NCBI GenBank assembly: GCA_002269645.1
Contig: NIVC01000197.1
Coordinates: 248,001 to 312,000, forward strand
Origin: Macrostomum lignano
Lineage: Eukaryota
Reading direction: 5' to 3'
Length of the DNA stretch: 64,000 nucleotides
Below the pieces are notes generated by a model. It had not been told where the DNA came from. It did no database searches and saw only the letters and a list, made by a program, of their open reading frames with translations. The number at the start of each line of letters is the position of its first letter. The first letter of the stretch is position 1. Of the stretch, positions 5,306 through 37,899 are shown piece after piece. Position numbers and translations under genes: made by a program.

Positions 5306-5375
5306 GTTTTCAACGTTGTGAAAGTGGCTGCTATTTGAGTTTTCGATGTGAAATTTCGACCTTGTGAAAGCACTC
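5306..5375. mobile_element. Solo arm fragment of the foldback-like element seen at 6825-7234
   Basis: GAAAGTGGCTGCTATTTGAGTTTTCGATGTGAAATTTCGACCTTGTGAAAGCAC closely matches the reverse complement of about 6880-6945 and ends like the TIR at 7234 (GAAAGCAC...CCCC). Confidence 0.65.
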
Positions 5376-18100: not shown

Positions 18101-21100
18101 TGATTCTGTGTTGTCCTGTGTCTCCGCATTTATGTACAAAACATAACCTGCTCATCCTCAGGTGCATCGAGATGCTGTGCACCAGAGATCACGGCCTAAT
18201 TAACAGTGTCGACAGCGACGGCAACTCGGTTCTGCACTACGCCCGCGAGAAGGAGATCACCTACACCCTGTGCCACTATCCGCAGATCAATAAGAACTTG
18301 GTCAATACCAAGGGCGAGACGCCGCTGCACTCCGTGATCATCGAGATGTACAAGACCACCGATAAGAAGAAGAAGGAAGACTACCTGGATGTGATCATGA
18401 CTCTGCTAGTGCTCGAGGCCGATGCTAGCATACCTAATATTGAGGGCGAGACTCCTCTGCACTCTGCCGTTCGGGTGAGTTTAATCATCCCCATATTAGG
18501 AGATTTAATTCACTTATCCTCTGAGCGAAGTTAATTCCATTGAATCCTTCAGAATCTCCCCAGTCTCATCCCATGGAATCTCTCACGAATCTTTCTATTT
18601 TCATCCCACAGAATCCCTTAAGAATCTCCCCATTTTATCTCACAGAATCCCTCACAAATCTCCCCATTTTCATCCCACAGAATCCCTTACGCGCTCGTAA
18701 GAATCTCCCCAGTCTCATCCCACAGAATCCCTCATAAATCTCCCCATTTTCATCCCACAGAATCTCCCCAGTCTCATCCCACAGAATCCCTCATAAATCT
18801 CCCCATTTTCATCCCACAGAATCTCCCCAGTCTCATCCCACAGAATCCCTCATAAATCTCCCCATTTTCATCCCACAGAATCTCCCCAGTCTTATCCCAC
18901 AGAATCCCCCAAGAATCTCCCCAGTCCCATCTTACAGAATCCGTCACGAATCTCTTGGTTCATCTCATAAAATCCCTTTAGAATATTTCCATTTATTTTC
19001 ATCCCTGAATTCGCATTTTGTTACTTATTCTGGCACTCTTTCGGGTTGCGCATTCATAATTATGCTAAACATTTGTTCCAGACTCGCAACGTTGACGTAG
19101 TGCGCGCTCTAATCGTATTCGAAGCGGACGTTAACTGTCTGAATAAGCGAGGCCAGACTCCCAGGCACATCTTGTCCAGCGAAGAGGAGGGTCAACCAGC
19201 TTTCGGGTCTGTTTGCTGCGTTCAGTACCTTCAACAGCATTAATTTTATTTAAAATAGCTGTCACCTTAATCTTTAATCGCTGTTTTGTTCTTTGCAGAA
19301 TTTTGCCCTACTTCCGTACCAGCACCCGGGATCGGTGAGCGCTGTTTCAATCTTGATCTGAGGGCATTGAAATCTCTGTTTTTACATGTATGATAAAGGA
19401 CTATTCAATTCGCAGATCTAATATACTGAAAATGAATAATTGAAGCTATAAAGATGAGATTTGCAGATTGGGTTCTAATAGGGTGAGATTTTGCAGATTA
19501 AGTTCTCAGGGTGAGATTTTGCAGATTGAGTTCTTATAGGGTGAGATTTTAAAGATTGAGCTCTTAATAGGGTGAGATTTTAAAGTTTGAGTTCTTATAG
19601 GGTGAGATTTTGAAGATTGAGTTCTCATGGGGTGAGATTTTGAAGATTGAGTTCTCATGGGGTGAGATTTCGCAGATTGAGTTCTTATAGGGTGAGATTT
19701 TGAAGATTGAGTTCTCATGGGGTGAGATTTTGCAGATTGAGTTCTTATAGGGTGAGATTTTTAAGATTGAGCTCTTAATAGGGTGAGATTTTGAAGATTG
19801 AATTCTTAATAGGGTGTGATTTTGCAGATTGAGTTCTTATAGGGTGAGATTTTGCAGATTAAGTTCTCATGGTGAGATTTTGCAGAATGAGTTCTTATAG
19901 GGTGAGATTTTAAAGATTGAGTTCTTATAGGGTGAGATTTTTAAGATTGAGCTCTTAATAGGGTGAGATTTTGAAGATTGAATTCTTAATAGGGTGTGAT
20001 TTTGCAGATTGAGTTCTTATAGGGTGAGATTTTGCAGATTAAGTTCTCAGGGTGAGATTTCTCAGATTGAGTTCTCATAGGGTGAGATTTCTTAGATTGA
20101 GTTCTTTGTGAGAGATTTCGAAGATTGAGTTCTTAGGGAGAGATTTTGCAGATTGAGTTCTTATAGGGTGAGATTTAAAAAATTGAGTTCTTAGGGAGAG
20201 ATTTAGCATAAGGTTTATCAATTTTAAAATTCATAGACTTTAAGAAACTTTTTGCATCACATTCTCACGCAGCGACGTGCTGATCTACACTCTTCACATG
20301 GTCGGCGCCAACCGCTGCTCCAGCAGCACCTCCGGCTGCGGTGACGGCTGTCACTACCGTGGCAAGAACAATGGCACAGTGCCTGAGGCCTGCAAAATAC
20401 CCGAGCTTGAGTCGCACTCGCCCGAGCCCGCTCCGAAATCGAATCCGTTGAGCGGCGCCTCAGCTGTTGCCTTGTTGAAGCGCCTGGACAGCAGTCGGTC
20501 CAGCTCCGGCGGTGTCAACTTTCGCAACTCCTCGTCCAGCAGCTTGAACAGCGGCGGGAACGCGTCAGCCAGCGGCGGCGAGCAGCAGTCGCCTAGCGAG
20601 CCGTGCGTCTACCTGGCGGAGTCGGCCAGCAGTCACAACATTCTGGCTAACGCCACCACTGCCAGCGTCGATGTGCCCGACAGTAGCGAAAGTGACGACG
20701 CTTCGCTGGCGTTGGACAACGCCGAAGGCGACACCCTGCTCTGCCTGGACGGCGGCGGCATTCGCGGCCTCATTCTGGCGCAGCTGATGCGGGCTATCGA
20801 GCGCCGGCTTATTCAACACGAGCAGCAGCCGCAGGCGCAGCTAGTTGACTATTTTGACTGGGTGTCCGGCACCAGCACCGGCGCAATCTGCGCGTTGGCT
20901 CTGGGCGTTGGCAAAACTGCCGCATTTGGCCGCTGTCTGTATTTGAAGCTGAAGGATCGAATGTTTCAGGTACGACAGTGCTGCATTCTGAATGAGTCAA
21001 GGACCCCGAATGAGTCTAGGACTCTGGATGAGTCTAGGACCCTAAATGAGTCTAGGACCCTAAATGAGTCTAGGACCCTGGATGAGTCTAGGACCCGAAT

Positions 21101-22657
21101 GAGTCTAGAACCCTAAATGATTCCAGGACCCCGAATGAGTCTGGGACCCTAAATGAGTCTATAGGACCCTGAATGAATCTAGGACCCTAAATGAGTCTAT
21201 AGGACCCCGAAGGAGTCTAAGACCCTATATGAGTCTGGGACCCTAAATGAGTCTATAGGACCCCGAAGGAGTCTAAGACCCTAAATGAGTCTATAGGACC
21301 CTGGATGAATCTAGGACCCTGAAAAATGAGTCTAGGACCCTAATGAGTCTAGGACCCTAAATGAGTCTAGGACCCTGGATGAGTCTAGGACCCTGGATGA
21401 GTCTAGAACTTTTGTCGCATTACTGTGCTGTACTACTCATTACTACTATGTTAATTTTAACGTAGTTTAATTGGTTCCTACATATCGGCAGGGCTCGCGT
21501 CCCTACGCAGCCGACTTCCTGGAGCAGACGCTGCAAGAGATGTTCGGCGAGAACACCGTAATGACTGACATCCCGCTGAGTCGCTGCGGCATCATGGTGC
21601 ACGCCCTGCTAGCTGACAGATTCCCGCCGCTGCTGCACACTTTCCGCAACTACGATCCGCCTTTGCCCGACCCTAAGCCGCTCAAGTCTTCGCCTGAGGT
21701 GGCCGTCTGCCGGCCCGAGGATCAGCTGGTCTGGCGGGCGGCCAGATCTTCCGGTGCGGCGCCGACATTCTTTAAATCCTGCGATCAGTACCTGGACGGC
21801 GGGCTGGTGGCTAACAACCCCACCCTGGATGCCCTGACTGAGGTCAGCTGTGCTCTATTCTTGCTTCTGTTTGCTTGCAGTGAATGAGTGAGGGAGTCAG
21901 TGAGTGAGTCAGTGAGTGAGTGAGTGAGTGAGTGGGTGAGTGAGTGAGTGAGTGAGTGGGTGAGTGAGTGAGTGAGTGAGTGGGTGAGTGAGTGAGTGAG
22001 TGAGTGGGTGAGTGAGTGAGTGAGTGAGTGATTGAGTGAGTGAGAGTGAGTGAGAGTGAGTGAGTGAGGGAGGGGCAGCAGAGACAGATGCATTGAATCT
22101 ATCCGAGGATATTGCAGCCAAGCAAAGCATCTCCACAATTTTCCTGTTCCCTCCCATCTCCCTCCCCGCAGCTGACCGCCTACTACAAGAAGAACTATAA
22201 CCAGCTGCCAAAGCTGCGCTGCGTTGTATCTCTGGGCACTGGCCGAATCCCAGTGATCCCAATCTCCAACCGTGACGTGTTCATGCCATCCAATCCGGCC
22301 CAGCTGTTGCAGACTTTCCGCGGCATGAACAGCCTGGCCCAGATCATGGTTGAGCAGGCCACTAGCGCCGATTATCAGACTGTACGCCGGGCCCAGGCCT
22401 GGTGCGACTGTCTCGGCGCCCGCTATTACCGACTGTCGCCGCCAATCTCGGCGGACATACCCCTAGACTGCAAGAGTACGTCAATATTGATCCAGATGCT
22501 TTGGGAGACCGAAGTCTACTTGGCTAGGAGTACGGACAAGCTCGACCAGCTGGTTCGGGTGCTCACAGCGCCGCACAGGGCGGCTAAAGCTGCTGCTACA
22601 TTCTCGGCCGAGCCAGGGACGCCTGGGACGCCTAAGACGCCTAAAGTGGCTGACTAG
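15105..22657 (+). CDS. PLA2G6: Calcium-independent phospholipase A2 beta (ankyrin repeats + patatin domain), about 934 aa
   Basis: Exons 15105-15196, 15292-15402, 15855-16254, 16996-17189, 18162-18474, 19082-19206, 19299-19334, 20273-20969, 21492-21842 and 22172-22657, phase-consistent. Ankyrin motifs GETPLH, nucleotide-binding DGGGIRG, catalytic GTSTG and DGG, and N-terminal NPYKI...AYSLFR resembling iPLA2-beta. The donor at 19207 is weak. Confidence 0.92.
15465..15800. repeat. About 20-bp GA-rich minisatellite, PLA2G6 intron 2
   Basis: Unit GGGAGAGATGCTGGAGGTG(G/A)GAA. Confidence 0.95.
16258..16963. repeat. (GACT)n tetranucleotide microsatellite, PLA2G6 intron 3
   Basis: GACT with occasional CACT, beginning a few nt after the donor. 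Confidence 0.97.
17380..18057 (-). repeat. Diverged inverted MITE family A copy whose inner segment is amplified into a 35-36 bp tandem array (about 17563-18057)
   Basis: The reverse complement of 17380-17600 shares TTGCTACT(A/G)AACTGAAAGTAG, AAAATAGCT and TGG(T/C)CCATCTA with family A. The array unit GTACATGTACATTAGCCAGCGCCACTGAAGAT corresponds to the family A segment CATGTACATTTCAGTGAACTGGCTAATGTACATT. Confidence 0.7.
18540..18960. repeat. Degenerate minisatellite, PLA2G6 intron 5
   Basis: CATCCCACAGAATCTCCCCAGTCT / CACAGAATCCCTCATAAATCTCCCC. Confidence 0.9.
19455..20200. repeat. About 30-bp minisatellite, PLA2G6 intron 7
   Basis: Unit GGGTGAGATTTTGAAGATTGAGTTCTTATA. Confidence 0.95.
20990..21408. 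repeat. About 18-20 bp minisatellite, PLA2G6 intron 8
   Basis: Unit GAGTCTAGGACCCTAAAT. Confidence 0.95.
21883..22068. repeat. (GTGA)n microsatellite, PLA2G6 intron 9
   Basis: Read directly from the sequence. Confidence 0.95.
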
Positions 22658-23750: not shown

Positions 23751-24060
23751 CTCTAGTGTACTCTAAGTATACATATTTGCGTAGGCAGCCTATACGCACC
23801 TAGTACTCGTAGTAGTTGGCCGCATTCCATAGCTCTAGCTGCTGAGAAATAGTTTGAAAGTTTTTATTGTCAAGTTTATTCATTTTTCAAGCGTTATTTT
23901 ATTTTAAATATTTAACTCTCTCAGTATTTCACTAGCAGGTAGTCATGTCCTGTTTTGGTTCCGGGTGTTCTATGCTCTCTGTTTTTATTCCATCGTTCTG
24001 TGTTTAGTGTAAATATTTATTCCGAGCTAGTTAAACACAGGCATACTGCGGCAATTTTCT

Positions 24061-24830
24061 TGGCACCTCAGAATGCCCACCTGAACCTTGGCATCTCAGA
24101 ATGCCCACCTGAACCTTGGCATCTCAGAATGCCCATCTGAACCTTGGCATCTCAGAATGCCCATCTGAACCTTGGCATATCAGAATGCCCATCTAAACCT
24201 AGGCATCTCAGAATGCCCATCTGAACCTTGGCATCTCAGAATGCCCATCTGAACCTTGGCATCTCAGAATGCCCATCTGAACCTTGGCATCTCAGAATGC
24301 CCATCTGAACCTTGGCATCTCAGAATGCCCATCTTAACCTAGGCATCTCAGAATGCCCATCTGAACCTTGGCATCTCAGAATGCCCATCTGAACCTTGGC
24401 ATCTCAGAATGCCCATCTGAACCTTGGCATCTCAGAATGCCCATCTTAACCTAGGCATCTCAGAATGCCCATCTGAACCTTGGCATCTCAGAATGCCCAT
24501 CTGAACCTTGGCATCTCAGAATGCCCATCTGAACCTTGGCATCTCAGAATGCCCATCTGAACCTTGGCATCTCAGAATGCCCATCTGAACCTTGGCATCT
24601 CAGAATGCCCATCTGAACCTTGGCATCTCAGAATGCCCATCTGAACCTTGGCATCTCAGAATGCCTATCTGAACCTTGGCATCTCAGAATGCCCATCTGA
24701 ACCTTGGCATCTCAGAATGCCCATCTGAACCTTGGCATCTCAGAATGCCCATCTGAACCTTGGCATCTCAGAATGCCCATCTGAACCTTGGCATCTCAGA
24801 ATGCCCACCTGAAACTTGGCACCTCAGCAT
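24061..24830. repeat. Homogeneous 28-bp minisatellite (intergenic)
   Basis: Unit GAATGCCCATCTGAACCTTGGCATCTCA, head to tail with no spacers. Confidence 0.97.
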
Positions 24831-25799
24831 TCCGCATTGATCAAAGTGAGTCATCTCAGCAACTCCCCTGTAATTCTGCTGATCTTGTGGGAAATTTTGC
24901 CGCAGACTAAACCGCATTATTCGCCAATTATGTATATTATCGAAGCAATTCGTTCGTTATTACTGATTAATTCAATAAAATTTGCATCGGCTCTGTTCTT
25001 GCTAATCTGTTGCTTTCGTGGACTTATGGTCTATATATTCAGTGCGACAGATCTTCGCGACCCTAAGATGCAAGGAATGGAAAGTTTGTCTTTAGTCTCA
25101 GTTCCAACACTAAACGTGGTTTTACTGTTGATGTAGTTTTCTGTTGTATAATTCCCGTAGTATCCTGATTTGACGTTTAGATTTCATGTCGAATAAAGTC
25201 GAAATGATGATTTGAATTCTTATTTACAAGCCGAATGCTGTGTTAATATTTCTCTATATACAGTAGTACTATTGTTGATTTGTACACTTAACCGTTCTGA
25301 TGTAATTGGTGCCCCGGATGCAGTGACAATATAAATATGCCATAACAATAATTTTCATTTTTATCGCCTTTCAAAATATTGTTGTTTTTGACTTAAACAA
25401 TCTGCATACTCAAACAGTAATCTTTAGAGTTTATTTATTTCTGTTATTAAAAATTAGCGGAAATTAAAAAAACAGTAGTTAATGAGCATTAGGGCATGAT
25501 GAAGGAACTTCCAATTCCAGTTGAAGAGGAGTCTGGACACAATCTAGTCTAGAATTTGTCAAACGTTTTAAACTTTAAAATGCCGCGGTTCAGTTCAATT
25601 TAAATCCCCATTTATCATTTTAGGAGCAGAAGTTGATTAAAAGCAAAGTACCCAACTTCCCCAAATTATTTGTCAGTATAAACTTTATTTCCCTTGAGCT
25701 TTGGGAATTTTTGCATTTTTATTACAGCTTGGGGGCTGAATTCGTGAAATTGGCTGACTTTTTTATTTCATTAACAAACACCGGATATGTAAGCTTTCA

Positions 25800-26143
25800 A
25801 TTGCCTTCTCACACAAGTCTCTCATCATAAGCATTCGAGGCTATAAGTTTTGTTCGAAACATATATTCTCTTGAATATGCAATTATGCTATAAAAAGAGC
25901 GTTGAAAGAAAATTACCTTCATTCAGCAACTTATTGGGGTCTGTAGTTGACCAGCCATCCGCCTTATTCACCTGATCTGACATCCTGTGACATTTTTCTG
26001 CAAGTCAAAGATTCACCGCGTCAACGGCGCTTTTCAACCGCAGAAGCGGCTGCAGATGCTTTCGATGAGGTGGTGGAGGGGATGTCTTGGTTTGAGAGAA
26101 TGAGGCGCTGCATATAGAGTCTGGTAGAGAGTATTTTGAGAAG
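25800..26143 (+). pseudogene. Degenerate mariner (Tc1/mariner) transposase C-terminal fragment
   Basis: 25956 onward translates HPPYSPDLTSCDIFLQVK...RRFSTAE...WFERMRRCI*, followed by EYFEK in a shifted frame. This is the YSPDLxxxD motif and typical mariner C-terminus, with a stop and a frameshift. Confidence 0.8.
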
Positions 26144-26359
26144 CTCTGAAAAATTCACTTTTAGTTGCTGCTTTTGCTCGAGAAACAACTTTCGTAGGCC
26201 CCCGTAACTGCAGTTTTCTACGGAAGTAAATTTCCTGCTTATAAAAATCACTCGACTCAGTGGATACCAGTGGGCATGTGCTTAGCCGGTGGAGCAAAGG
26301 TTTTGGAACTCCACAAAAAGTTCGCGTAGGTTGCTAGAAATAGCTGGGTCAGCTGGGTT

Positions 26360-27460
26360 GACCATAGACTGTAGCTAGTAGAATAGAAGAGTATAGAATT
26401 TTAATGCGCCACTGTGACCAGCGCTGCTGACCATGCTCAACAGGAAGGGCTTTTTTACCATAGACTTGAAAACATGATCGACAGTTAAGGCCTGAGATTT
26501 AATCCCCGCTTTGGCCCGGCTAGCTGCCTATCTCTGTGTATTTTCATTTCTTGGACTCCAAGAAATAATTGTCTATGGCTAAAAAAAATTCTTTCAGTAT
26601 AAGATAATCCCCACTTGATTTCGCTTCTTTGGCCTAGGAACGGCTGAGGACTGCGTTTCTAGGCCGAGGCTATTCCTCCCTCCCTCGCTGACTCCCTCTG
26701 ACACCCTATGATACAAGACTGCTTATAACTGTTCGTAGTTAGATTTTTCACTTTTGATCCCCATTTGTTGCTATTCAGTGTTGTGAAACCGGTCTTGTTT
26801 CAAAAGTATAACAGCATCTTTGTGTTTCTACCATAGACAATTATTTCTTGGCCTCCAAGAAACGCCTGATGGGAGTCTCAACTCATTTGAAGGAATGTTT
26901 TTTAGCCATAGACAATTATTTCTTGGAGTCCAGCGTTATCCCCGGGCTTCAGGATGAAATCCAGTAGGTCCGGCGAAATCTCCATATCCGGGGCTTCAAC
27001 AACGACAGCAGCAGAGATGTCACCCATATTCGGTACCAAGCTACACACAACTGAAGCTTTTCTGATCTTACACAGAATATTCGGCTTTATAGAGCTTTAT
27101 AGCCAATAGTCTATGGCCGAGGCTTAGTCTCATATCCTCCCGCTGGCTGCGGCAATTAAATATTATAATCCCCACTTGATTTCGTTTCTTTGGCCTAGGA
27201 ACTGCTGAGGACTGCGTGGGGATTATCTTATACTTAATACACCCCTAGATGGGCCACTCCAGCCGCATGGCCGCAGCGCCAAAACCCCGGGGTTACGGCC
27301 GGCCATAGACTGTACGTAGCCTCCGCTTCTCTTAAGAATTTAGCACAGTACTCGAAGAATAGCACTTGAAAAGCATTAGAATCTAACTGATTCAGCAGCT
27401 AGTGTCTGTGGCCCCCAACCCCGGGGGTTTTGGGGTCTCGGAGACGGCCGCTAAATACAT
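26360..27460. mobile_element. Mosaic of short inverted-repeat elements carrying CCATAGAC and TCCCCACTTG motifs
   Basis: About 45-bp inverted pair 26552-26596 / 26888-26932; AGTATAAGATAATCCCCAC (about 26596) inverted to about 27217-27235; about 52-bp direct repeat at about 26606 and about 27166; AAAACCCCGGGG inverted pair at about 27275-27435. Confidence 0.55.
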
Positions 27461-28206
27461 TAGCAAATTTGGAGTGACACATCTAGGTAATATAGAATCT
27501 GCGGTTAAGGCTGTTGATTTAAGGTCAGCTCTGCTTACCATACGGCAGCTCAAGGTTAAACTTTCAGTCTATAATGCGTCTCTAGGTCTTTTGTGTCTAA
27601 GCGTGTCATGACGCATTCACTTTAAACTTGGCATCCTGTGTGCGTCTGGCGCTTAAACAACCTATAGGATGCGACCCCAAGATGCAGTGCTGTCGTTGAC
27701 ATCAATACAGCTTACAATACTCTAGTCCACTAAGTTTTCGTTGCAGATTCAAGGCAATGCCGATTGGGAAAGATACATGGGGCTGTGAGGCATCTGGCAT
27801 CCAGAAGCGTGATGTCGAGCCAGTTTAATTATATATATGAGGCTTAAAATTAAACTTCGTCATTTTGAACGGCATCGGCATTTTTAATATGGGCAAAAAA
27901 GCTGAATCTGGCAAAGCGCCCTAGTCTCGATCCTCATTATAGAAAACAGCTTTTTGCGCGTTCTAGAATCTTGGAGTCAAGCTTCTTAAGTCGCCTGGTT
28001 AAAAGAGCATAAGTACTCGTAACGTCTTACTGTTCACTTTATCATTTTATTTCGGTTATTATCCTTATATTGCCGGTTCCTTATCCAGCAGCTGCTCGAT
28101 AAAATGTATGCAACTTTTCGTTCAGCTAAGATTGCGCATCAGGTTTGCACTTCTATTCAATACAATCCAGTCTGTCTTCATGATCACTACCACAGTGCTC
28201 AAGTGC

Positions 28207-28817
28207 TCAGTACTCCACTTCGTCGGTTTCGCGGCCAAATCGGAACGGCATGTGCACCGTGTCGTCGCGTTTGCCCCATCGGAACACGTTGGCTCGCTTG
28301 CCCCATCGAAACACGTTGGCTCGCTTGCCCCAGCGAAAGACATTCGGAGCCCGCTTGCTCTCTGGCCAGTAGTAATAGACCTCTTCAGTTGATGGCGCCG
28401 GATACTCGCTCATCAGGATCCTGCCAGGCGCCATCCGTTTGCCGCGCTTCAATTCCAAAGCCTGAGAGTCCTCACCTGCGGGTTTTGTATCGAATAAAGA
28501 TAATGAAGGAAGTGCCGTCTTGCGTCCGTCATCTTTGCTGATTTCATTTCAGCCGATTTCCTTAATTAGCAAAAATGGTTCCAGCATCCTAGAGTTGCAT
28601 CCGCGATGCCGAAAATCAATTATGGAAAATATTTCGGGGCCTAGTTGCTGCTAGTGCTGGTTGACAGCCTAAGATTTTCAAATTTCAACTGTTGCTTTGA
28701 TCGGAGACAGAGTGCAAGTTTCGCATATTCACCATTTGCAACGCGCGCGCTCGTTTGCGTAACCATCAGAAAGGCCAAGGCCAGGCCGCAGACCAGCATT
28801 GCTGTGTTTAGAAACAT
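28207..28817 (-). CDS. Neuropeptide precursor (about 117 aa): signal peptide, APNVFRWamide, 2x ANVFRWamide, DDTVHMPFRFamide
   Basis: Exon 1 28817-28733 (MFLNTAMLVCGLALAFLMVTQTSA signal-like; donor G|GTGAAT) joins in phase 1 to exon 2 28475-28207 (CCCGCAG acceptor). The peptides are bounded by KR and end in G-KR or G-R. Confidence 0.88.
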
Positions 28818-31440
28818 TTCCAATCAGACTGTTGGCCAAATACTGCAGGAATGAAACGGTGCGGGATTTACATCGCATGCGGGCTTACAAATAGCTGCGA
28901 TGTTCGTTACAAACTGCAGAGAAATCTTCACTTACCAATTTAAGTTAGAAGGGCTACTTAACTCTGAGCAAATGAGTCAACTGCTGGTTGTAGACTGTCT
29001 GTTACTCAGTGGCGTGCTCATTCTTGATGGAGAGAATCTTTGCTTAAATAGGCTCCGAGTGCGATGAACCAGCTACTTGCTATTCGAATCCCCTGCAAAA
29101 AAACGCGATACAACAACATTGTAGCTGATTGGCTAGTTAAAAACATCATTTTGGGGGCGGACTTGAGCACCAAAAATATATCTTGCCGCTCACTAGCTGG
29201 ACAGTTTGCCTCTGTAAAATAGTCCATTTATGGAATCAATAAGAAGTGACGACTTTTATTGCCATATATGTAGAAGAAAAAACACCGTCGTGTCGTCGAG
29301 GATAAGAATCTGTGTCAACAGATGAATTGCAACGACATGCGCATACATGTACACAATGAATGCCCTTCCATGTATGCATACATGTATACATATATGTATG
29401 CCCTTCCACTTGACGCCCTGCGATTTATGCTATATAATTTGACTATTGCGAAATAACCTTTTCAAAGAAAGCACGTTTTATTTAAAAAACAGAAAAGATT
29501 ATCGGTAGGTATCTATCTTCTAGGTATCCCTAATACTATTTGGGCTATTCAAATATGATATAAGCATCCAACACTCGCAGACTTAATAATCTACGCAAAA
29601 TTGATCGTAACAACCAAACCGATGTTATCGACAGTCGACGTCTCCTCATTGTTTAGCAATTTGACGATCGTTGTTCGCACATTTTTAATGCAGAACAATC
29701 CATTACTACAAACAATGATAGATTGTGTATATGGTTTTGGAGATAGACAATGATAAATTTTTCACGAGTGGCGAAGCCACGAGTGACTAAAATTTATCAG
29801 TCTATGACAAAACCATATACACAAACACATTGTCTCATGAATGTATTTTTAGAAGCCTAAAATAATGATTCCTAAGCGTGGAATAATGAGCGTACAGCAT
29901 GACACAATGCATTGTCTGTAGGATCGTCAAACAGAAAAACAATGCAAAGAATCAGCGGTCGCAGTGCGTGACAACGATTGTCTATGGCTCGCGCTGTAGT
30001 ATCATTGCTGTTTGATATGACAGTAAATGTTAAGACATACAAAATATAGATTTTTAAGATTGGCTAAGGTTGTCATGCAATTAGAGTGATGATGGCTCTG
30101 ATTAATAATGATGAATTTGTATAGATGCATGTACACTGTAGCTACAGTATACAAAATATTTGATTTGAGAGGTGTGTTGCTAAAGTTTCTGTGAACGACG
30201 ACAGCAATGTCGAAATGAGCTGAACTTTCAGTTACAACTCCTTGCACAGCTCCTCTTGAACGGTAAAACTGCAGAACGAGTTTGATATGCTGAGCGAAAT
30301 GGCATTGATTTGGCACCGACAAAAATAGCAACAGAATTTAATGCTGTATCACGAACTTCTCAAGACACAACATTACGCTGAAACTACCTGGACATGAAGA
30401 GTTACGTTACGGTCTTATAAGCAACCTACCGACTAAGCACGTCCAGCCTGAAATTGAATGTGCGCGCTTGATAAATACATGGACTCTATCATTCAGATCA
30501 GTATAAGCAAGTGGTACGTGCGTAGGCACCGTGGAATACCAACCAGGCTAAATACACTGTATGAGTAGTAACTTGAAATGGCCTGACTACATGTACATAT
30601 AAAGCTACGCTCGTATACTAACACATATGACAACGTTGTATAACATGTATTGTATTTTAATCAATGCGGTAGCGAAACCTATTCAATATAAATCACAGTT
30701 TTTTATAAATGAGTTTTCTCTGCTCGTTTATCTTTGCTTTAATCTTTCCTGCATTGAAATGGCATGCAATACATTGTATGCATTATAGTGGCATACATGT
30801 AATATACGCTCGTGTTTATAAGTTATGTGTTTTAAAGTGGTCTTTACAAACTTTGCAAACATGCAATTGTGTCTTTAAGAATAAGAATTTGGCGCGAGAT
30901 TTCAACGCTACGTTTTGCCCTACATTTTGTCAGCACAACACTAGCCCAACGTCAGACCACTTCAATAAAACTTTGAGCGCGCCTAGTACGTAGCAAAAAG
31001 CAGGGTTTTTAATAAACTGAAGAATTATTTCTGACGCAAGCTAATCTCATCAATATTTATCGATTTTATACATTTTAGCGTATTTAATTTATAAACTGTC
31101 TCGGCTGACGTTGGACTGGTGAAATTCTGGTTTCTAATATTGCATTTCCCGCTAAGTTTTTGTGACGTCCCAAATCCGGATACTTAAGGTTTTAAAGTAA
31201 ATCAAATCAATAATTTTAAATTGTGACTATCTAAATATGAGTGCATTTAAAGCTAGTTTTAATGTTTAAGTTTTAGTTCCTTTGTTAAATGTTTTCCGTG
31301 ATCAAATAAAAAACACGTTTCACTAGTAATCAGTTTTCAGATTTAACATAAAAATATCAGAGGCTTTTTTGTGAAAATTTGGAAGATTTGTGGATAGTGC
31401 TATTTTAATCGATAAGGTTGCATAATAAGGGCTGCTCACA

Positions 31441-34400
31441 ATGGCATTTGAGCAACCAGCAACGGTTCCAAATGAATTCAACCAGCTTGATTCAGGTAAT
31501 TAAATATGTAGTCAGTTTATTCAGTTGATTCATAAAGTTCACTTTACTCCTATATTGGGAAAAAAGAAAATTTTGTATGGCAGTATTTTTAGATTATACG
31601 ATAAATTGTCGATAGTGAAAACAATAGGCCCAGGGAAAAAGTTTTTTATTTAGAATAATAATTAGAAATGATTGGTGCCACAAGAATTCAATTAATACAT
31701 GACTGAATAATACTCAATTAATTACTCCCAAGTTCTGAACAGTAGTTGTAGTTGCTCACTTACATCATTTGTAAATTCGAATGTTTTTACACAGATGTCT
31801 GTGTGTGTTACAAGTTAACGTTAAAAATATTTATCACGCTACATGCAATTATTGCTAAAGTTAATGTTAAACTAAAAGCCAATAACTTTATTGAATGATC
31901 TATTGTAAATATAGCAATATAAGTTTCCATAATCTTTCTTCAGTATAGTATTTTAACGCATATCAGAACAAAGAAATAATATGACATGTGCATTAATTTT
32001 TTTATTTTAGAAAGCAATAATTACACCTATTAAACATTGTTTTTTACAGTATTATTTGTTTCCATACGAATTTTATCAAAATTTTCAGTTTTTCAAAAAT
32101 GTAAAAAAATTTATTTAATTTAGACTGGCTATGCTTAATTTATATTCTGATACAATAAGTAAGCAATATTTCAACTAATACAAGCATGTGAGATGTCTGC
32201 TGTGTAATTGTTAGTGAACATTAGCATTAAAATTAGCATCATAAAAAGCATATCTAGTAGATAGATACATTTTTTGTGAATTTTGGATTTAGTTCACAAA
32301 AATAAATAATTAATTAATTCTAAATTTCTATGCGTTGAATTCATATAAAAGGCTTGTTAAATTCCCTTCAACAACGCCCCATAGGCAACAGCGACGAGGA
32401 GGCCAACGAGGAGGGCGTGGTTGGCAACGTTAGCAAATTCTGCGTCACGCCGCCCAGCTACACGGGCAAGCCGAAGAAGGGCCACCTGGTGTTTGACGCC
32501 TGCTTCGAGGGCGGCAACTTGGGCCGGGTGGACTTCATCAGCGAGTTCGAGTACGACTTGTTCATCCGGCCGGACACTTGCAACCAGCGCTACCGGGTCT
32601 GGTTCCACTTCTCCGTGGAGAATGTCAAAGCCGACCAGGTTGGTGCTTGGCTATACACCAACATCACTACTTTATGTTGATTCATTCAGATATTGAGTCT
32701 GGAGAATGTCAGTTAATACCGGTTACTGCCATTTATAGCTACAGGAATAAATATGCTAATGATGGCTTTAGCACCAGGGGCTTTAGCACCAGCGGCTTTA
32801 GCACCAGGGGCATTAGCACCAGGGGCTTTAACACCAGGGGGAATTAGCACCAGCGGCTTTAGCACCAGGGGCATTAGCACCAAGGGCTTTAGCACCAGGG
32901 GGAATTAGCACCAGGGGCTTTAGCACCAGGGGCTTTAGCACCAGCGGCTTTAGCACCAGGGGCATTAGCACCAGGGGCATTAGCACCAGGGGGAATTAGC
33001 ACCAGGGGCTTTAGCACCAAGGGCTTTAGCACCAGGGGGAATTAGCACCAAGGGCTTTAGCACCAGGGGGGCATTAGCACCAGCGGCTTTAGCACCAGGG
33101 GCATTAGCACCAGCGGCTTTAGCACCAGGGGCTTTAGCACCAGGGGGCTTTAGCACCAAGGGCTTTAGCACCAGGGGGCTTTAGCACCAGGGGGAATTAG
33201 CACCAAGGGCTTTAGCACCAGGGGCTTTAGCACCAAGGGCATTAGCACCAGGGGCGCCTGCACTATTATAAATGACTTATAAATTTTTCGGCAAATCAAT
33301 AACTAAACTTGTCTATTGTTAATTTCAGCGAGTGATCTTCACCATAGTGAACTTCAGCAAGACCAAGTCTCTCTATAGAGAAGGCATGACGCCTGTTGTT
33401 AAATCCACAAGCCGGCCAAAATGGTGCGCTCCATCAACTTTGTTGGTTTTTATTTTTTAATACAATCGATAATTTAAGGGCTTTGATTACTTTATAATTG
33501 ACCGATTCTTCCTATTCTACTGTTAGTAAAGATGAAAGTAGGCGACTAGTAACTTTTTATTTTTTGTCATAAACCACCCCCTCAACCCCAGGGTCCGGCT
33601 GCCCCCTAAGCACGTGTACTATTACCGCTGCCCGGAGCACCGCAAGAACTACGTGCTCAGCTTTGCGTTCTGCTTCGACAAAGAGGACGACGTCTACCAG
33701 TTTGCCTACTGCTACCCGTACACCTACACCCGGCTGCAGGCCTATCTGGACAGCCTGGAGCGCAAGGGCCTGGACTATGTGCAGCGCGACCTACTCGGCC
33801 TCAGCGTGCAGCAGCGGCGGCTCGACCTGCTGACCGTCAGCCACCCGGACAACCTCACCGATGAGGCACAGAAGCGAGTGGTCTTCATCACCGCCAGGGT
33901 TCACCCGGGCGAGACCCCGGCCTCTTTCGTGTGCCAGGGCCTCATCGACTTTCTGGTCAGCTCGCATCCCATTGCAAAGCAGCTGCGCGACTACCTGGTG
34001 TTCAAAATTATCCCCATGCTGAACCCTGACGGCGTCTACCTGGGCAACTACCGGTAAATTAAAGACTGCAGCTTCCCGGTCGATTCCACAGTCCCTTCCC
34101 CGGTTCCTTCCCCGGTTCCTTCCCAAAATTTTTGTCCGGTCTCTTCCCCGGTCCCTTCCCCGGTTCCTTCCCCGGTCCCTTCCCCGGTCCCTTCCCCGTT
34201 TCCCTTCCCCGGTTCCTTCCCCGGTTCCTTCCCCGGTTCCTTCCCCGGTTCCTTCCCAAAATTTTTGTCCGGTCTCTTCCCCTGTTCCTTCCCCGATTCC
34301 TTCCCAGAATCTTTGCCCAGTTTCTTCTCAGGTTCTCTATCTGGTTCTTTCCCCTGTCCTTCCCGGGTTCTTTCCCCGGTTCCTTCCTCGGTTTTTTCTC

Positions 34401-37400
34401 CGGTTTCTTCGTTGCTCTTTCCCCGGCTCTCCGGTTCTTAAACCAGTTCACTCTCCGAATCATCCAGCTCCTTTTTTGTTTCCCTGGTTTTCACCAGTTT
34501 TAGCCCGGGTTCTTTCCTTCCTTAGCAGCTCCTTGCCCTGACCATTAGACGCTCTAAAATCTCTAAAAAGCAAGTCTCACAGCGTAAACATTGAAGACTC
34601 TCACCTCTCACCCGCAGCTGCTCTCTGATGGGTTTCGATCTGAACCGGCACTGGCAGGAGCCCTCGCCCTGGGCTCATCCCACTATCTATGCCTGCAAGA
34701 AGGCCATGATCGATATGTACAACTCCAAGGTATGAGTGCTTCTGTGCGTGCGGCCTCGCCTTTTGAAAGTGTTTTAGTCGTGAAATTTTAACCTGCCAAA
34801 TATTCTTAGGACCACGATATCGACTTTTTCTGCGACCTGCACGCGCACAGCACCCTGATGAACGGCTTCATGTACGGCAACACTTTTGACGATCCCGACA
34901 AGCAGGAGAGGCAGAACGTCTTTCCCAAGCTGTTCCAGCAGAATGCCGAGGATTTTAGTTTGACTAACACCAACTTTAATCGAGACGCTGTGAAGGCCGG
35001 AACTGGGCGAAGGTTGGTTCTACTTGAGTGTGATGTACTTGGGTGCTATCGTACTTGGTGCTATCGCACTTCTGCACTTCAGTGCTATTGTAATTGGGTG
35101 CTTGCGTACCTGGGTGCTTGCATACTTGGTTGCTTGCGTACTTGAGTGCTGTGCGTACTTGGTTGTGATCGTACTTGGGTACTATCGTACTTGAGTGTGA
35201 TCGTACTTTGGTGTGATCGTATTTGGGTGCATCTTACTTCGGTGCTATTGTACTTGGGTGTGTTCGTACTTAAGTGCTTGCGTACTTGGGTGTGATCGTA
35301 CTTGGGTGTTATAGTACTTGGGTACGACCACACTTAGGTGCTTGCGTATTTGGGTGTTATCGTACTTGGATGTGATCGTACTATTGTGGTACCAGCGTAC
35401 TTAAGTACCAGCATACAATTAAATATACAAACAAAGTACTTAACGCAATTTAGTACTGACGTATTTGGGTGCTAGCTTACTTACAATATAGCAATTGTAG
35501 TTCGTAGCATACTTGCGAGCAGCGTACTTAATGCACTTAAGTGCTAGCGTATTTTCGTAATTGAGTGTTAGCGTACTGCAAGAACTTGTAACGCCCTAAG
35601 TTCACCTTAATACTGCAATTACTGCGGAATCTTTATCTGGTTTTATTCTACGAGTATATTCATATTAAAATTGCCTCTAAACTTCAAAAACCGAACAGAG
35701 CCCTTGTTGGCATATTTGACGACTCCGTGCTGTGCTACACTCTGGAGGTGTCGTTCTTCAGCTATATGGCCAACAGTTCCGGTGGCACACTGCCCTACAC
35801 CGAGGAGGGATGTGAGTGTGCTCGATGTGATCTGGCTTGTTTGTGTGTGTCAATCTAGTGAACTGCCACATAGGGTACATTTTCAGCCTCGGTTGGTAGC
35901 TATAGTTGAGAATTTAGGCAAGCGTACCTGAATCAAAGTACTGTTAAAGTGCAAGCGTACCTGAACCAAAGTACTGTTAAAGTGCAAGCGTACCTGAACC
36001 AAAGTACTGTTAAAGTGCAAGCGTACCTGAACCAAAGTACTGTTAAAGTGCCAGCGTACCTGAACCAAAATACTGTTAAAGTGCAAGCGTACCTGAACCA
36101 AAGTACTGCTAAAGTGCAGGCGTACCTGAACCAAAATACTGTTAAAGTGCAAGCGTACCTGAACCAAAGTACTGTTAAAGTGCAGGCGTACCTGAACCAA
36201 AGTACTGTTAAAGTACAACCGTACCTGAACCAAAGTACTATTTAAGTTCGAGCGTACCTAAACTGAAGCCCATATTTAAGTGCACTCGAACCCAAACGCT
36301 TTGCAGACGCCAAACTCGGCCGAAACTTGGCGCGCACATTCCTGGACTATTATAAAGTTCAAAGCGTCATTCCTTCGATGCCAGTAGCAGGTGCTACTGG
36401 AAAGTCAAAAGGCGGTGGCAGCGGTGGCGCCAGCGGAGGAGGCGCGGGCGGCAAGGACAGCAGCTCGCGGTGAGGCTGACCCAGAGCTTTGCTAATTACA
36501 TGCACGCGACTGATTGGATTCGGAAAGAGAATGATGAAAATTTTAACAAAAGTAAAATATTTTTGTTGATTTCTTCCAGTCTGCAGCTGCGCCCCTGCTC
36601 TCGTTACTCGACCAGAAATCGCTGGATCAATGTAAACCTCTGTTCCACTTGCAATGACCGGGGTAACCCCTTTACAGCACCCGACAATGGTCTCTATTGT
36701 GCATGCTCTGCATGGAGTCCACTTCTTCTAGTCTTTCTCGGTGCTCTTGTCCCTCCCTGCCTCCATTTATGTCCATGGGAGAGATATTCCCGAGTAGTTA
36801 AAGTGCCTAATCCAATTAAATTATTGCATTACTTATTATCTTTCGGCATGCTTAGTCTATTTGATTAGTTCAATAATGTTTGGCTCTGCATTGTCAAGAG
36901 GGAAATTACTGCCTGCATCACAACATAATCATCGTCTTTTAAGGCCAGTTAAAATACGTTTTTTTGGCATGTTTAACTGAGCAAATGTTTACTGTTTATT
37001 ATTATTAAGTTTACACCTGTTTATTAGGGCGGCCACCTTGGAAAAATGAGTGTCTGGCAACAAGAATTTCACTGCTGCTTGCGAGTTGCCTGAGATACGG
37101 GCAGACACACAGGCAGACACACAGGCAGACACACAGGCAGACACACGGGCAGGCAGACACACAGGCAGACACACAGGCAGACACACGGGCAGGCAGACAC
37201 ACAGGCAGACACACAGGCAGACACACAGGCAGACACACAGGCAGACACACGGGCAGGCAGACACACAGACACACAGGCAGACACACAGACACACAGGCAG
37301 ACACACAGGCAGACACACGGGCAGACACAGGCAGACACACAGGCAGACACATAGGCACACAGGCAGACACACAGGCAGACACACGGTCAGACACACAGGC

Positions 37401-37899
37401 AGACACACAGGCAGACAGGCAGACACACAGGCAGACACACAGGCAGACAGACAGACACACGGGCAGACACACCGGCAGACACACAGGCAGACACACAGGC
37501 AGACAGGCAGACACAGGCAGACACACAGGCAGACAGGCAGACACACAGGCAGACACACAGGCAGACAGGCAGACATAGGCAGATACACAGGCAGACACAC
37601 AGGCAGACAGGCAGACACACGGGCAGACACACGGTCAGAGACACAGGCAGATACACAGGCAGACACACAGGCAGACAGGCAGACACACGGGCAGACACAC
37701 TGGCAGACACACTGGCAGACACACAGGCAGACACACAGGCAGACAGGCAGACACACAGGCAGACAGGCAGACACAGGCAGACACACAGGCAGACACACGG
37801 GCAGACACAATCCGCACCACTCCGCACTGCAGATACTTGATGGGAGAGGCGAGCAGTAGCGCCGGCAGGTTCGGCAGCGGCGGTGGCCGAGCGAAGTGA
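31441..37899 (+). CDS. AGBL4: Cytosolic carboxypeptidase 6 (tubulin deglutamylase, M14 family), about 507 aa
   Basis: Exons 31441-31495, 32385-32638, 33329-33423, 33592-34053, 34618-34729, 34810-35012, 35699-35811, 36307-36469 and 37833-37899. Motifs KKGHLVFDACFEGGNLGRV, RVHPGE, MLNPDGV, GFDLNRHW, DLHAHS and YTLEVS. The first and last exons are less certain. Confidence 0.92.
32762..33254. repeat. About 15-bp minisatellite, AGBL4 intron 2
   Basis: Unit TTAGCACCAGGGGCT. Confidence 0.95.
34075..34440. repeat. About 12-bp pyrimidine-rich minisatellite, AGBL4 intron 4
   Basis: Unit TTCCCCGGTTCC, decaying to the right. Confidence 0.9.
35020..35400. repeat. Degenerate minisatellite of about 16 bp, AGBL4 intron 6
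   Basis: CGTACTTGGGTGTGAT variants. Confidence 0.85.
35920..36260. repeat. 33-bp minisatellite, AGBL4 intron 7
   Basis: Unit GCGTACCTGAACCAAAGTACTGTTAAAGTGCAA. Confidence 0.95.
37078..37808. repeat. CAGGCAGACACA-type array, AGBL4 last intron
   Basis: 12-bp core with 8-bp variants. Confidence 0.95.

What the first reader, a model, noticed from the sequence alone, without database searches (positions are those of the whole stretch)
28207..28817. Compact neuropeptide precursor co-encoding three NVFRWamides and an MPFRFamide
Seen: joining two ORF fragments across an intron gives a signal peptide, an acidic spacer, KR-APNVFRW-GKR-ANVFRW-GKR-ANVFRW-GKR-DDTVHMPFRF-GR and an acidic tail. Known: G before basic residues yields C-terminal amides. 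RWamides (luqin-type, cnidarian Antho-RWamide) and PxRFamides (GnIH/RFRP-like) are normally on separate precursors, and this one lacks the C-terminal cysteine pair of luqin precursors. Inference: a possibly undescribed peptide family or an unusual FLP-like precursor with an F-to-W switch, perhaps signalling through two receptors.
Basis: partly seen in the sequence, partly recalled or inferred. Interest (0 to 1): 0.75.

Follow-up and report, generated by a model that had tools for sequence, protein, structure and literature searches.

The report
Flatworm sNPF/LFRFamide-type neuropeptide precursor gene
This is a real two-exon neuropeptide gene of the flatworm Macrostomum lignano, but it belongs to the known LFRFamide/short-neuropeptide-F family of molluscs, annelids and planarians (NPP-4), where short FRF/FRY/FRW-amides plus one long ...PFRF-amide on one precursor is the normal layout.

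Summary
On the minus strand, exon 1 (28817-28733) and exon 2 (28475-28207), joined across a 257-nt GT...AG phase-1 intron, encode a 117-aa secretory precursor. It gives APNVFRW-G, two ANVFRW-G and DDTVHMPFRF-G, each flanked by basic cleavage sites.

The window is Macrostomum lignano scaffold NIVC01000197.1. The gene is already in GenBank as the RNA-derived model BOX15_Mlig013963g1, "hypothetical protein", with the same splice but one repeat unit too few.

The "undescribed family" reading is not supported. An exhaustive HMMER scan found 82 relatives, nearly all multi-copy x(L/V)FR(F/Y/W)-GKR precursors. Of the 84 collected, 37 end in the same H-x-P-(F/W)RFG tail. Fifteen of those (one being this gene's own GenBank model) also carry RWamide units, including Platynereis "RYamide"/sNPF and Owenia. 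Planarian Smed-npp-4 (SSVFRFa, GSVFRYa), published as a putative LFRFa/sNPF orthologue, matches at 41% identity.

It is therefore a new, apparently unnamed member of a known family. Two details are modestly interesting: every short peptide ends in Trp, and the ancestral terminal PFRFamide that planarian npp-4 lacks is retained. Processing, amidation and the receptor (probably sNPF-type) are inferred, not shown.

The parts
28733..28817 (-). Coding exon 1. It holds the start codon (28817-28815), the signal peptide and four further residues, and ends after the first base of the Gly29 codon (phase 1).
   Evidence: The junction is identical in GenBank protein P0001.
28746..28817 (-). Predicted signal peptide, residues 1-24 (MFLNTAMLVCGLALAFLMVTQTSA), with cleavage after T-S-A.
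   Evidence: Hydropathy and the -3/-1 rule, judged by inspection. Not run through SignalP.
28476..28732 (-). Single 257-nt phase-1 intron, GTGAAT...CCCGCAG.
   Evidence: The paralogue Mlig026077 has an intron of the same position and phase, and so, by inference, does the annelid-type locus L004.
28207..28475 (-). Coding exon 2. It holds the propeptide spacer, all four peptide units, the acidic tail and the TGA stop (28209-28207).
28327..28350 (-). APNVFRW-G unit (residues 71-78), flanked by KR on both sides. Predicted product APNVFRW-NH2, [M+H]+ 888.48.
28300..28320 (-). ANVFRW-G unit, copy 1 (residues 81-87). Predicted product ANVFRW-NH2, [M+H]+ 791.43.
28273..28293 (-). ANVFRW-G unit, copy 2 (residues 90-96). 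One such 27-nt unit is missing from the GenBank model, though which one cannot be told.
28234..28266 (-). DDTVHMPFRF-G unit (residues 99-109), followed by a single Arg and the acidic tail ETDEVEY. This is the family's conserved terminal peptide. Predicted product DDTVHMPFRF-NH2, [M+H]+ 1263.59.
28046..28051 (-). AATAAA, a likely polyadenylation signal about 155 nt downstream of the stop codon.
   Evidence: This is a sequence motif only.

Best explanation
The locus is the Macrostomum lignano gene BOX15_Mlig013963g1. It is a two-exon precursor gene of the lophotrochozoan LFRFamide / annelid "RYamide" (sNPF-type) / flatworm NPP-4 neuropeptide family.

Shown here:
- The gene structure and the encoded 117-aa product.
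- An RNA-derived gene model with the same splice.
- A second genomic copy that encodes the identical protein.
- Homology in the repeat unit, the terminal peptide and the overall architecture to named molluscan, annelid and planarian precursors.

Inferred from established prohormone biochemistry:
- Signal peptidase cuts after Ala24.
- Prohormone convertases cut at the KR pairs and at the single Arg after FRFG.
- A carboxypeptidase removes the basic residues.
- Peptidylglycine alpha-amidating monooxygenase converts each C-terminal Gly to an amide.
- The products would be one APNVFRWamide, two ANVFRWamide and one DDTVHMPFRFamide.

Inferred by analogy with oyster LFRFamides, which activate an sNPF-type GPCR, and with planarian NPP-4 peptides, which have been proposed as ligands of Smed-NPYR7-10: the peptides are released by neurons and act through sNPF/PrRP-type rhodopsin-class GPCRs, probably in feeding, energy or reproductive control.

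The C-terminal Trp is a lineage variant of the F/Y/W position. Annelid members already use W in some copies.
For: - Identity of the locus. Window 18207-38817 is 100% identical to NIVC01000197.1, and the annotated gene spans exactly 28207-28817. The annotation is RNA-derived.
- Second copy. The gene on NIVC01000606.1 differs only at two synonymous third positions in the CDS and at two intron positions.
- Breadth of relatives. phmmer against 1.84 billion representatives gave 82 hits at E<=1e-3, and nearly all are multi-copy x(L/V/I)FR(F/Y/W)GKR precursors. The best stretch to Mytilus P0009 covers query residues 6-114, so the match is not confined to the repeats.
- Terminal peptide. 37 of 84 relatives end in H-x-P-(F/W)RFG plus an acidic tail, within 17 residues or fewer of the C-terminus, as this product does (VHMPFRFGRETDEVEY). 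Fifteen of these (one is this gene's own GenBank model) also carry RWamide units.
- Named anchors: Platynereis AEE25645.1, Owenia CAH1772730.1, Mytilus XP_071152755.1, Nucella KAL8614997.1 and Sinanodonta KAL3836908.1.
- Planarian link. Smed-npp-4 (SSVFRFa, RGVAFRFa and QSVFRYa seen by MS; SVAFRFa and GSVFRYa predicted from the precursor) aligns at 41% identity over 69 aa, pairwise E 1e-10, and the alignment extends into the ...YP... spacer.
- Published view of the family. NPP-4 is called a putative orthologue of molluscan LFRFa (PMC9071130). Its peptides are nominated as planarian sNPF-type ligands (10.1101/712687). LFRFamides activate the oyster sNPF-type receptor.
- Gene structure. The phase-1 intron a few residues after the signal peptide is shared with the paralogue Mlig026077 and, by inference, with an annelid-type gene.
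Against: - No peptide, amidation or receptor data exist for this gene.
- Similarity rests on short repeated motifs, so full-length scores are driven by copy number. Local reciprocal phmmer ranking does not single out this gene over the paralogue Mlig026077 as the Smed-npp-4 counterpart.
- The spacer alone finds no relative outside M. lignano.
- The -3 residue of the short peptides is Val, as in the planarian, not the Leu of molluscs. The tail has V-H-M-P where trochozoans have P-H-(T/V)-P.
- A phase-1 intron after the signal peptide is common among neuropeptide genes and discriminates weakly.
- No Pfam model covers the family, so no curated threshold could be applied.
Confidence: 0.85

Rival explanations
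1. It is a member of the separate annelid-type "FRWamide" family (Urechis unicinctus FRWamide MT162138; Capitella teleta ELT90794.1). These are FRWamide-only precursors, distinct from the sNPF/RYamide precursor.
For: Urechis FRWamide is the best named non-Macrostomum hit in the word-indexed search (E 8e-11). All short peptides here end in FRW, as they do in that family.
Against: Members of that group share an N-terminal C-x3-C-x(7-10)-C-x-C motif (seen in P0002, P0013, P0017, P0038, P0061 and P0082). This product lacks it: its only Cys lies in the signal peptide. None of those proteins has the H-x-PFRFG tail that this product has. The two groups may in any case be paralogous branches of one superfamily.
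Confidence: 0.07
2. It is a previously undescribed, lineage-specific peptide family that converged on RF/RW-amide C-termini.
For: No paper in the searchable library names this gene or ANVFRWamide. Pfam finds nothing. The spacer has no detectable homologue outside M. lignano.
Against: Convergence would have to reproduce four things together: the VFR(F/Y/W)-GKR unit, the position and sequence of a single terminal H-x-PFRF-G-R-E-acidic peptide, the precursor layout, and the intron phase.
Confidence: 0.04
3. It is the FMRFamide/FaRP gene orthologue, or a luqin/RYamide-type or GnIH/NPFF-type PxRFamide precursor.
For: The C-terminal RFamide and RWamide motifs superficially fit. NCBI names some relatives "FMRFamide-like neuropeptides 7" or "FMRFamide-related peptides type HF-4-like".
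Against: M. lignano has a separate FMRFa/YMRFa propeptide, Mlig001796.g3 (PMC9234716). Luqin precursors carry one peptide next to the signal peptide and a C-terminal Cys pair, and neither feature is present here. The NCBI names are automatic labels on proteins that have the LFRFa layout and tail.
Confidence: 0.02
4. It is not a functional gene. On this view it is a chance ORF across one of the many tandem repeats of a repeat-rich genome, or a pseudogene.
For: The region is full of tandem repeats. The raw motif count is not above shuffles. The GenBank model disagrees with the DNA by one repeat unit.
Against: There is a signal peptide, canonical splice sites and an RNA-derived gene model. The open frame is kept identical in two genomic copies, with only synonymous changes. 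Homology crosses phyla.
Confidence: 0.02

Closest known systems
Flatworm NPP-4 (Smed-npp-4 of Schmidtea mediterranea; GNFFRFamide of Moniezia expansa is the classic FRFamide that Collins 2010 relates to npp-4)
   Same: Same phylum. It is a small precursor of about 110 aa with a signal peptide. The repeated unit is x-V/A-F-R-(F/Y)-G-KR, against N-V-F-R-W-G-KR here. There is a ...YP... spacer before the repeat block. Identity is 41% over 69 aa. Some Smed peptides were detected by MS, and they are proposed as sNPF-type ligands.
   Different: Smed-npp-4 ends in F or Y, never W. It has an extra copy directly after the signal peptide. It lacks the terminal H-x-PFRFamide and acidic tail, ending at ...QSVFRYG. 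One-to-one orthology against the paralogue Mlig026077 is unresolved.
Annelid "RYamide"/sNPF-type precursor (Platynereis dumerilii AEE25645.1; Owenia fusiformis CAH1772730.1)
   Same: It co-encodes xFRWamide units and a single terminal ...PHVPFRFamide followed by acidic residues, on one precursor behind a signal peptide. An annelid-type gene, locus L004, has a phase-1 acceptor at the equivalent position.
   Different: Annelid precursors are longer (140-250 aa). FRY/MRYamides predominate, with only 1-2 LFRWamide copies. The tail is P-H-V-P, against V-H-M-P here.
Molluscan LFRFamide precursor (Crassostrea, Sepia, Mytilus, Lymnaea, Aplysia)
   Same: Several short xLFRFamides are followed by one long C-terminal ...PHTPFRFamide in bivalves and cephalopods (Sepia PHTPFRFa, Crassostrea SVDNEPTHPFRFa). 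The ...FRFG-R-E-E ending is the same. In gastropods the ending ...FHWGRETDE even shares GRETDE with this product. These are experimentally established ligands of an sNPF-type GPCR in the oyster.
   Different: Molluscan short peptides end in RFamide, with Leu at -4, and none ends in Trp. Gastropods replaced the PFRF tail with ...GFHWG.
Annelid Cys-motif FRWamide precursors (Urechis unicinctus FRWamide; Capitella teleta ELT90794.1)
   Same: Multiple xxFRW-GKR units, and significant similarity (E 8e-11 to 2.5e-11).
   Different: They carry an N-terminal C-x3-C-x(7-10)-C-x-C motif and no PFRF tail. This product shows the reverse pattern.
Arthropod short neuropeptide F (sNPF) and deuterostome PrRP
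   Same: They are the proposed bilaterian orthologues of the LFRFamide system on the basis of receptor orthology (PMC7314547, PMC6389622).
   Different: The peptide motif is xPxLRLRFamide. No direct sequence similarity to this product was detected here.

Membership tests
Lophotrochozoan LFRFamide / RYamide (sNPF-type) / flatworm NPP-4 precursors | Secretory precursor with several tandem short peptides of the form x-(L/V/I)-(F/L/M)-R-(F/Y/W)-Gly flanked by dibasic sites | tested here: met
   There are three NVFRW-G units between KR pairs, behind a signal peptide. The same unit is seen in 82 HMMER relatives and in Smed-npp-4.
Lophotrochozoan LFRFamide / RYamide (sNPF-type) / flatworm NPP-4 precursors | A single longer terminal peptide ...H-x-P-(F/W)-R-F-Gly, followed by a monobasic site or none and a short acidic C-terminus (the bivalve, cephalopod and annelid state) | tested here: met
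   This product ends in DDTVHMPFRFG-R-ETDEVEY, 8 residues from the C-terminus. Of the 84 relatives, 37 have the motif within 17 residues or fewer of the end. Literature examples are Sepia PHTPFRFa and the oyster peptide. The motif is absent from Smed-npp-4 and from gastropods, so it is not universal in the family.
Lophotrochozoan LFRFamide / RYamide (sNPF-type) / flatworm NPP-4 precursors | Significant sequence similarity to named family members beyond a single motif | tested here: met
   Whole-library E-values are 1.6e-11 to Mytilus P0009 (query residues 6-114) and 4.6e-10 to Nucella P0011 (residues 27-99). Pairwise E to Smed-npp-4 is 1e-10. A caveat is that the spacer alone finds nothing.
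Lophotrochozoan LFRFamide / RYamide (sNPF-type) / flatworm NPP-4 precursors | Gene structure: the signal peptide lies on exon 1 and all peptides on one downstream exon | tested here: met
   Exon 1 is 85 nt with a phase-1 intron. The paralogue has an 88-nt exon 1, also phase 1. The annelid-type locus L004 has a phase-1 acceptor at the equivalent residue, but its exon 1 was not found within 3 kb. This feature discriminates weakly.
Lophotrochozoan LFRFamide / RYamide (sNPF-type) / flatworm NPP-4 precursors | Peptides activate an sNPF/PrRP-type GPCR | not testable with these tools
   This has been shown only for oyster and abalone LFRFamides. It is proposed, not tested, for planarian NPP-4.
Lophotrochozoan LFRFamide / RYamide (sNPF-type) / flatworm NPP-4 precursors | Mature amidated peptides present in nervous tissue | not testable with these tools
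   No M. lignano peptidome was available. In the planarian, NPP-4 peptides were detected by MS.
Luqin / RYamide (luqin-type) | [quoted passage not shown] | tested here: not met
   Here there are four peptides at the C-terminal end. The only Cys is residue 10, inside the signal peptide.
Annelid Cys-motif FRWamide precursors (Urechis, Capitella) | An N-terminal C-x3-C-x(7-10)-C-x-C motif, only FRWamide copies, and no PFRF tail | tested here: not met
   The motif is absent from this product. It is present in P0002, P0013, P0017, P0038, P0061 and P0082. This product also has the PFRF tail.
FMRFamide (FaRP) precursor | Multiple F(M/L)RFamide tetrapeptide copies | tested here: not met
   There is no FMRF or FLRF unit. 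A separate M. lignano FMRFa/YMRFa propeptide, Mlig001796.g3, is reported.
Cnidarian Antho-RWamide | pGlu-x-L-R-W-amide peptides with an N-terminal Gln, and cnidarian-type processing | tested here: not met
   The units begin with Ala after KR, so no N-terminal Gln is available. The organism is a flatworm.

The most novel reading that the evidence does not exclude
The long terminal peptide (DDTVHMPFRFamide here, ...PH(T/V)PFRFamide in annelids, bivalves and cephalopods) may be a separate signalling molecule with its own receptor, distinct from the sNPF-type receptor used by the short FR(F/Y/W)amides. The precursor would then be an ancient two-ligand, two-receptor unit, conserved at least since the common ancestor of flatworms and trochozoans.

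Three observations are consistent with this. The tail is far more conserved across phyla than the short peptides. It always occurs exactly once and always in last position. The review cited here reports receptor activation for only three oyster peptides from the precursor, although the table in PMC4208409 lists four.
Probability: 0.2. Interest if true: 0.55.

Novelty: new member of a known kind. Interest (0 to 1): 0.3.

Why it matters
Practically, it gives a name and a corrected product to a Macrostomum lignano "hypothetical protein". The product is 117 aa with three NVFRWamide units, not 108 aa with two.

It also supplies predicted peptide masses for a transgenic, regenerating flatworm model in which neuropeptide function can be tested.

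For evolution, it is a flatworm precursor that still carries the terminal H-x-PFRFamide of annelid and molluscan LFRFa/sNPF precursors. Planarian npp-4 has lost that peptide. This strengthens the proposed NPP-4 = LFRFa = sNPF orthology, which has so far rested on short C-terminal motifs and receptor trees. It also dates the terminal peptide to before the flatworm-trochozoan split.

Finally, it shows that the C-terminal aromatic residue (F, Y or W) is freely exchangeable in this family, which matters for motif-based neuropeptide mining. None of this overturns current views.

Tried and rejected
- Luqin, Antho-RWamide, FMRFamide and GnIH-type assignments. Defining features were tested and not met (see the membership test).
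- Pfam scan of the product and three relatives. No family was found.
- Rfam scan of 24000-33000. Nothing was found.
- Reciprocal word-indexed search from Smed-npp-4. It was too coarse and returned only Smed-npp-4 itself and a cephalopod LFRFa-type protein.
- Local reciprocal phmmer ranking to decide which M. lignano paralogue is the Smed-npp-4 orthologue. This was uninformative because scores track repeat number.
- Explaining the 9-aa deficit of the GenBank model by a second intron. Rejected, because none of the 55 possible 27-nt deletions has GT...AG ends.
- The neighbouring Peptidase_M14 gene as a possible neuropeptide-processing carboxypeptidase. Its Pfam hits include Pepdidase_M14_N. From my own knowledge this marks cytosolic carboxypeptidases rather than carboxypeptidase E, so I see no functional link. 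This was not tested further.
- The two key flatworm catalogues (McVeigh 2009, Koziol 2016) are not held in the library. I therefore cannot exclude that an EST-based Macrostomum npp entry for this gene exists there.
- The third Macrostomum propeptide, Mlig032062.g1 (GRTNNKNVFRWamide), was not retrieved.

Full report
**1. What is in the sequence**

- Reading the minus strand of 27900-29100 and listing ORFs shows the 83-aa ORF 28207-28458. It ends ...KRAPNVFRWGKRANVFRWGKRANVFRWGKRDDTVHMPFRFGRETDEVEY*.
- Upstream there is an ORF beginning MEMFLNTAMLVCGLALAFLMVTQTSARVANG.
- Joining 28817-28733 (85 nt) to 28475-28207 (269 nt) removes a 257-nt intron, GTGAAT...CCCGCAG. The result is an in-frame 354-nt CDS encoding 117 aa.
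- The intron is phase 1 and lies five residues after the likely signal-peptide cleavage site (T-S-A, residue 24).
- Hydropathy of residues 7-18 is 2.6, and the rest of the protein is hydrophilic.
- The window has 45.7% GC and a CpG observed/expected ratio of 0.65, so it is eukaryotic.
- The four hydrophobic-R-[FWY]-G-[KR] motifs are the only ones in any frame of the 64-kb window. The count itself is not above shuffles (4 against a mean of 2.1). What is non-random is that they cluster in one frame behind a signal peptide.
- The coding repeat appears as a 27-nt, 3-copy tandem array at 28271-28358.

**2. Where the window comes from, and evidence that the gene is real**

- The 117-aa product finds GenBank protein BOX15_Mlig013963g1, a "hypothetical protein" of Macrostomum lignano, at E 6e-64.
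- The encoding scaffold NIVC01000197.1 (assembly Mlig_3_7, GCA_002269645.1) is 100% identical to window 18207-38817. The annotated gene spans exactly 28207-28817.
- The GenBank protein carries the same exon junction...RVANGEDSQ....
- The Mlig_3_7 annotation was built only from RNA evidence: StringTie/TACO on RNA-seq, BLAT-mapped de novo transcripts, and TransDecoder (PMC5730564). The model therefore counts as transcript support for the splice.
- A second copy lies on NIVC01000606.1, where the surrounding 5.7 kb is about 98% identical. It has four differences in the 611 bp: two in the intron and two at synonymous third positions (Phe84, Asn91). Both copies therefore encode the identical protein. 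This fits the duplicated chromosomes of the DV1 line.

**3. An annotation error**

- The GenBank protein is 108 aa and lacks one ANVFRWGKR unit, although the DNA is identical.
- None of the 55 possible 27-nt deletions that would give that protein has GT...AG ends. The gap is therefore a collapsed repeat in a mapped transcript, or a copy-number allele. It is not an intron.
- The paralogue Mlig026077 shows the same problem. Its DNA encodes seven (Q/P)SGVFRW units and the model has five.
- P0004, a 947-aa model from another source, starts in exon 2 and then runs out of frame. It is an artefact.

**4. What family it belongs to**

Literature first:
- LFRFamide precursors of molluscs combine several short xLFRFamides with one long terminal peptide. 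Sepia has three GNLFRFa plus TIFRFa, NSLFRFa and PHTPFRFa. The oyster has GSLFRFa, SSLFRFa, GALFRFa and SVDNEPTHPFRFa (PMC4208409).
- Annelid counterparts contain LFRWamides. Examples are Capitella LFRWamide and the Platynereis "RYamide" gene, which encodes LFRWamides and xxRYamides (PMC6389622).
- That Platynereis gene has since been re-interpreted as sNPF (10.1101/2021.03.03.433790).
- In flatworms, Smed-npp-4 encodes SSVFRFa, SVAFRFa, RGVAFRFa, GSVFRYa and QSVFRYa. SSVFRFa, RGVAFRFa and QSVFRYa appear in the MS tables (PMC2953531 supplement).
- The Smed-npp-4 peptides have been nominated as ligands of the planarian sNPF-type receptors NPYR7-10 (10.1101/712687).
- NPP-4 is called a putative orthologue of molluscan LFRFa (PMC9071130).

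Computation:
- BLASTP of the product against Smed-npp-4 gives 41% identity over 69 aa (E 1e-10). The alignment includes part of the ...YP... spacer.
- phmmer against 1.84 billion representatives gives 82 hits at E<=1e-3. Nearly all are multi-copy x(L/V/I)FR(F/Y/W)GKR precursors.
- Of the 84 collected proteins, 37 end with H-x-P-(F/W)RFG followed by acidic residues, within 17 residues or fewer of the C-terminus. This product does the same (VHMPFRFGRETDEVEY). Fifteen of those 37 (one being P0001, this gene's own GenBank model) also contain RWamide units.
- Named members are Platynereis AEE25645.1, Owenia CAH1772730.1, Mytilus XP_071152755.1, Nucella KAL8614997.1 and Sinanodonta KAL3836908.1.
- The gastropod ending ...FHWGRETDE shares GRETDE with the Macrostomum tail.
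- The gene architecture (signal-peptide exon, phase-1 intron, single peptide exon) recurs in the M. lignano paralogue. By inference from the acceptor TTTTTTCCAG|AA and the full-length relative P0043, it also recurs in an annelid-type locus.

**5. What it is not**

- It has no C-terminal Cys pair and its peptides are not next to the signal peptide, so it is not luqin-type.
- It has no FMRF units, and M. lignano has a separate FMRFa/YMRFa propeptide.
- A distinct group of FRWamide-only precursors (Urechis "FRWamide", Capitella ELT90794.1 and several unnamed proteins) shares an N-terminal C-x3-C-x(7-10)-C-x-C motif and lacks the PFRF tail. This product shows the opposite pattern.
- Pfam has no model for any of these proteins.

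**6. Mechanism**

Shown:
- The gene structure and the product.
- RNA-derived support for the splice.
- Conservation of the protein between the two genomic copies.
- Cross-phylum homology.

Inferred from standard prohormone processing:
- Signal peptide removal.
- Convertase cleavage at the KR sites and at the single Arg after FRFG.
- Carboxypeptidase trimming of the basic residues.
- Gly-directed amidation.
- The expected products are APNVFRW-NH2, two ANVFRW-NH2 and DDTVHMPFRF-NH2, with masses given.

Inferred by homology:
- Neuronal release.
- Action on sNPF/PrRP-type GPCRs.
- Likely roles in feeding, energy balance and reproduction, as described for oyster, abalone and insects.

Whether the long tail peptide uses the same receptor is unknown for the whole family. 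The source read here mentions receptor activation by only three oyster peptides.

**7. Novelty and verdict**

- The gene is a new and, as far as the searchable literature shows, unnamed member of a known family.
- Two details are modestly interesting. All short copies end in Trp, and the ancestral terminal PFRFamide that planarian npp-4 has lost is retained.
- McVeigh 2009 and Koziol 2016 could not be read, so a prior catalogue entry cannot be excluded.
- Interest is scored at 0.3.

Noticed in passing
window 28271-28358 (and L005/L006 5001-5560): GenBank models of M. lignano neuropeptide genes under-count tandem peptide repeats. Mlig013963 has 3 NVFRW units in the DNA but 2 in the model. Mlig026077 has 7 xSGVFRW units in the DNA but 5 in the model. 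No canonical intron can explain the gaps, so they probably reflect collapsed repeats in mapped transcripts. The same error may affect other repeat-containing genes in this annotation.
   Followed up: yes
L005/L006 (NIVC01004577.1, NIVC01001908.1), gene 5001-5560: A second M. lignano FRWamide precursor, BOX15_Mlig026077g1/g2 (PAA47094.1, PAA62704.1). It encodes GTTFRWa plus (Q/P)SGVFRWa copies and has the same phase-1 intron after the signal peptide, but no PFRF tail. A third propeptide, Mlig032062.g1 (GRTNNKNVFRWa plus AYGSMPWa), is mentioned in PMC9234716 and was not retrieved.
   Followed up: partly
proteins P0002, P0013, P0017, P0038, P0061, P0082 (not in the window): The Urechis "FRWamide" precursor was published as having no orthologue outside Urechis (PMC7737342). 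It has clear relatives, including Capitella teleta ELT90794.1, that share an N-terminal C-x3-C-x(7-10)-C-x-C motif. It therefore appears to be a wider, at least annelid, family.
   Followed up: partly
window about 31441-37899 (+), = L002 919-7377: The neighbouring gene has Peptidase_M14 and Pepdidase_M14_N Pfam hits and a 507-aa product. From my own knowledge this combination marks a cytosolic carboxypeptidase (CCP/Nna1-like), not a prohormone-processing carboxypeptidase E. The adjacency to a neuropeptide gene is probably coincidental.
   Followed up: no
window up to about 22657 (+), = L002 16161-20611: A neighbouring gene encodes a protein of about 938 aa with ankyrin repeats and a patatin domain (a patatin-like phospholipase). 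It is also present next to the duplicated copy on NIVC01000606.1.
   Followed up: no
window 18542-18954, 19455-20208, 20988-21406, 24059-24827, 32764-33255, 35918-36263, 37100-37809: Many long tandem-repeat arrays, with periods of 12-59 nt and up to 63 copies. One example is a 28-nt unit with 27.5 copies at 97% identity (24059-24827). This fits the reported figure of about 15% simple and tandem repeats in the M. lignano genome. Some of the arrays lie inside the annotated span of the carboxypeptidase gene.
   Followed up: no
protein P0006 (ENA contig, unknown organism): A precursor with nine NNVMRW-GKR copies. NNVMRWamide resembles ANVFRWamide, and the protein has neither a PFRF tail nor the Cys motif. 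The source organism was not identified.
   Followed up: no
window 28359-28475, product residues 38-42: An extra KR-G-KR lies inside the propeptide (…ALEL-KR-G-KR-MAPGRIL…). It would release only a lone Gly if both sites are cut. It could be the degenerate remnant of an N-terminal peptide copy like the first SSVFRFG unit of Smed-npp-4, but this is speculative.
   Followed up: no
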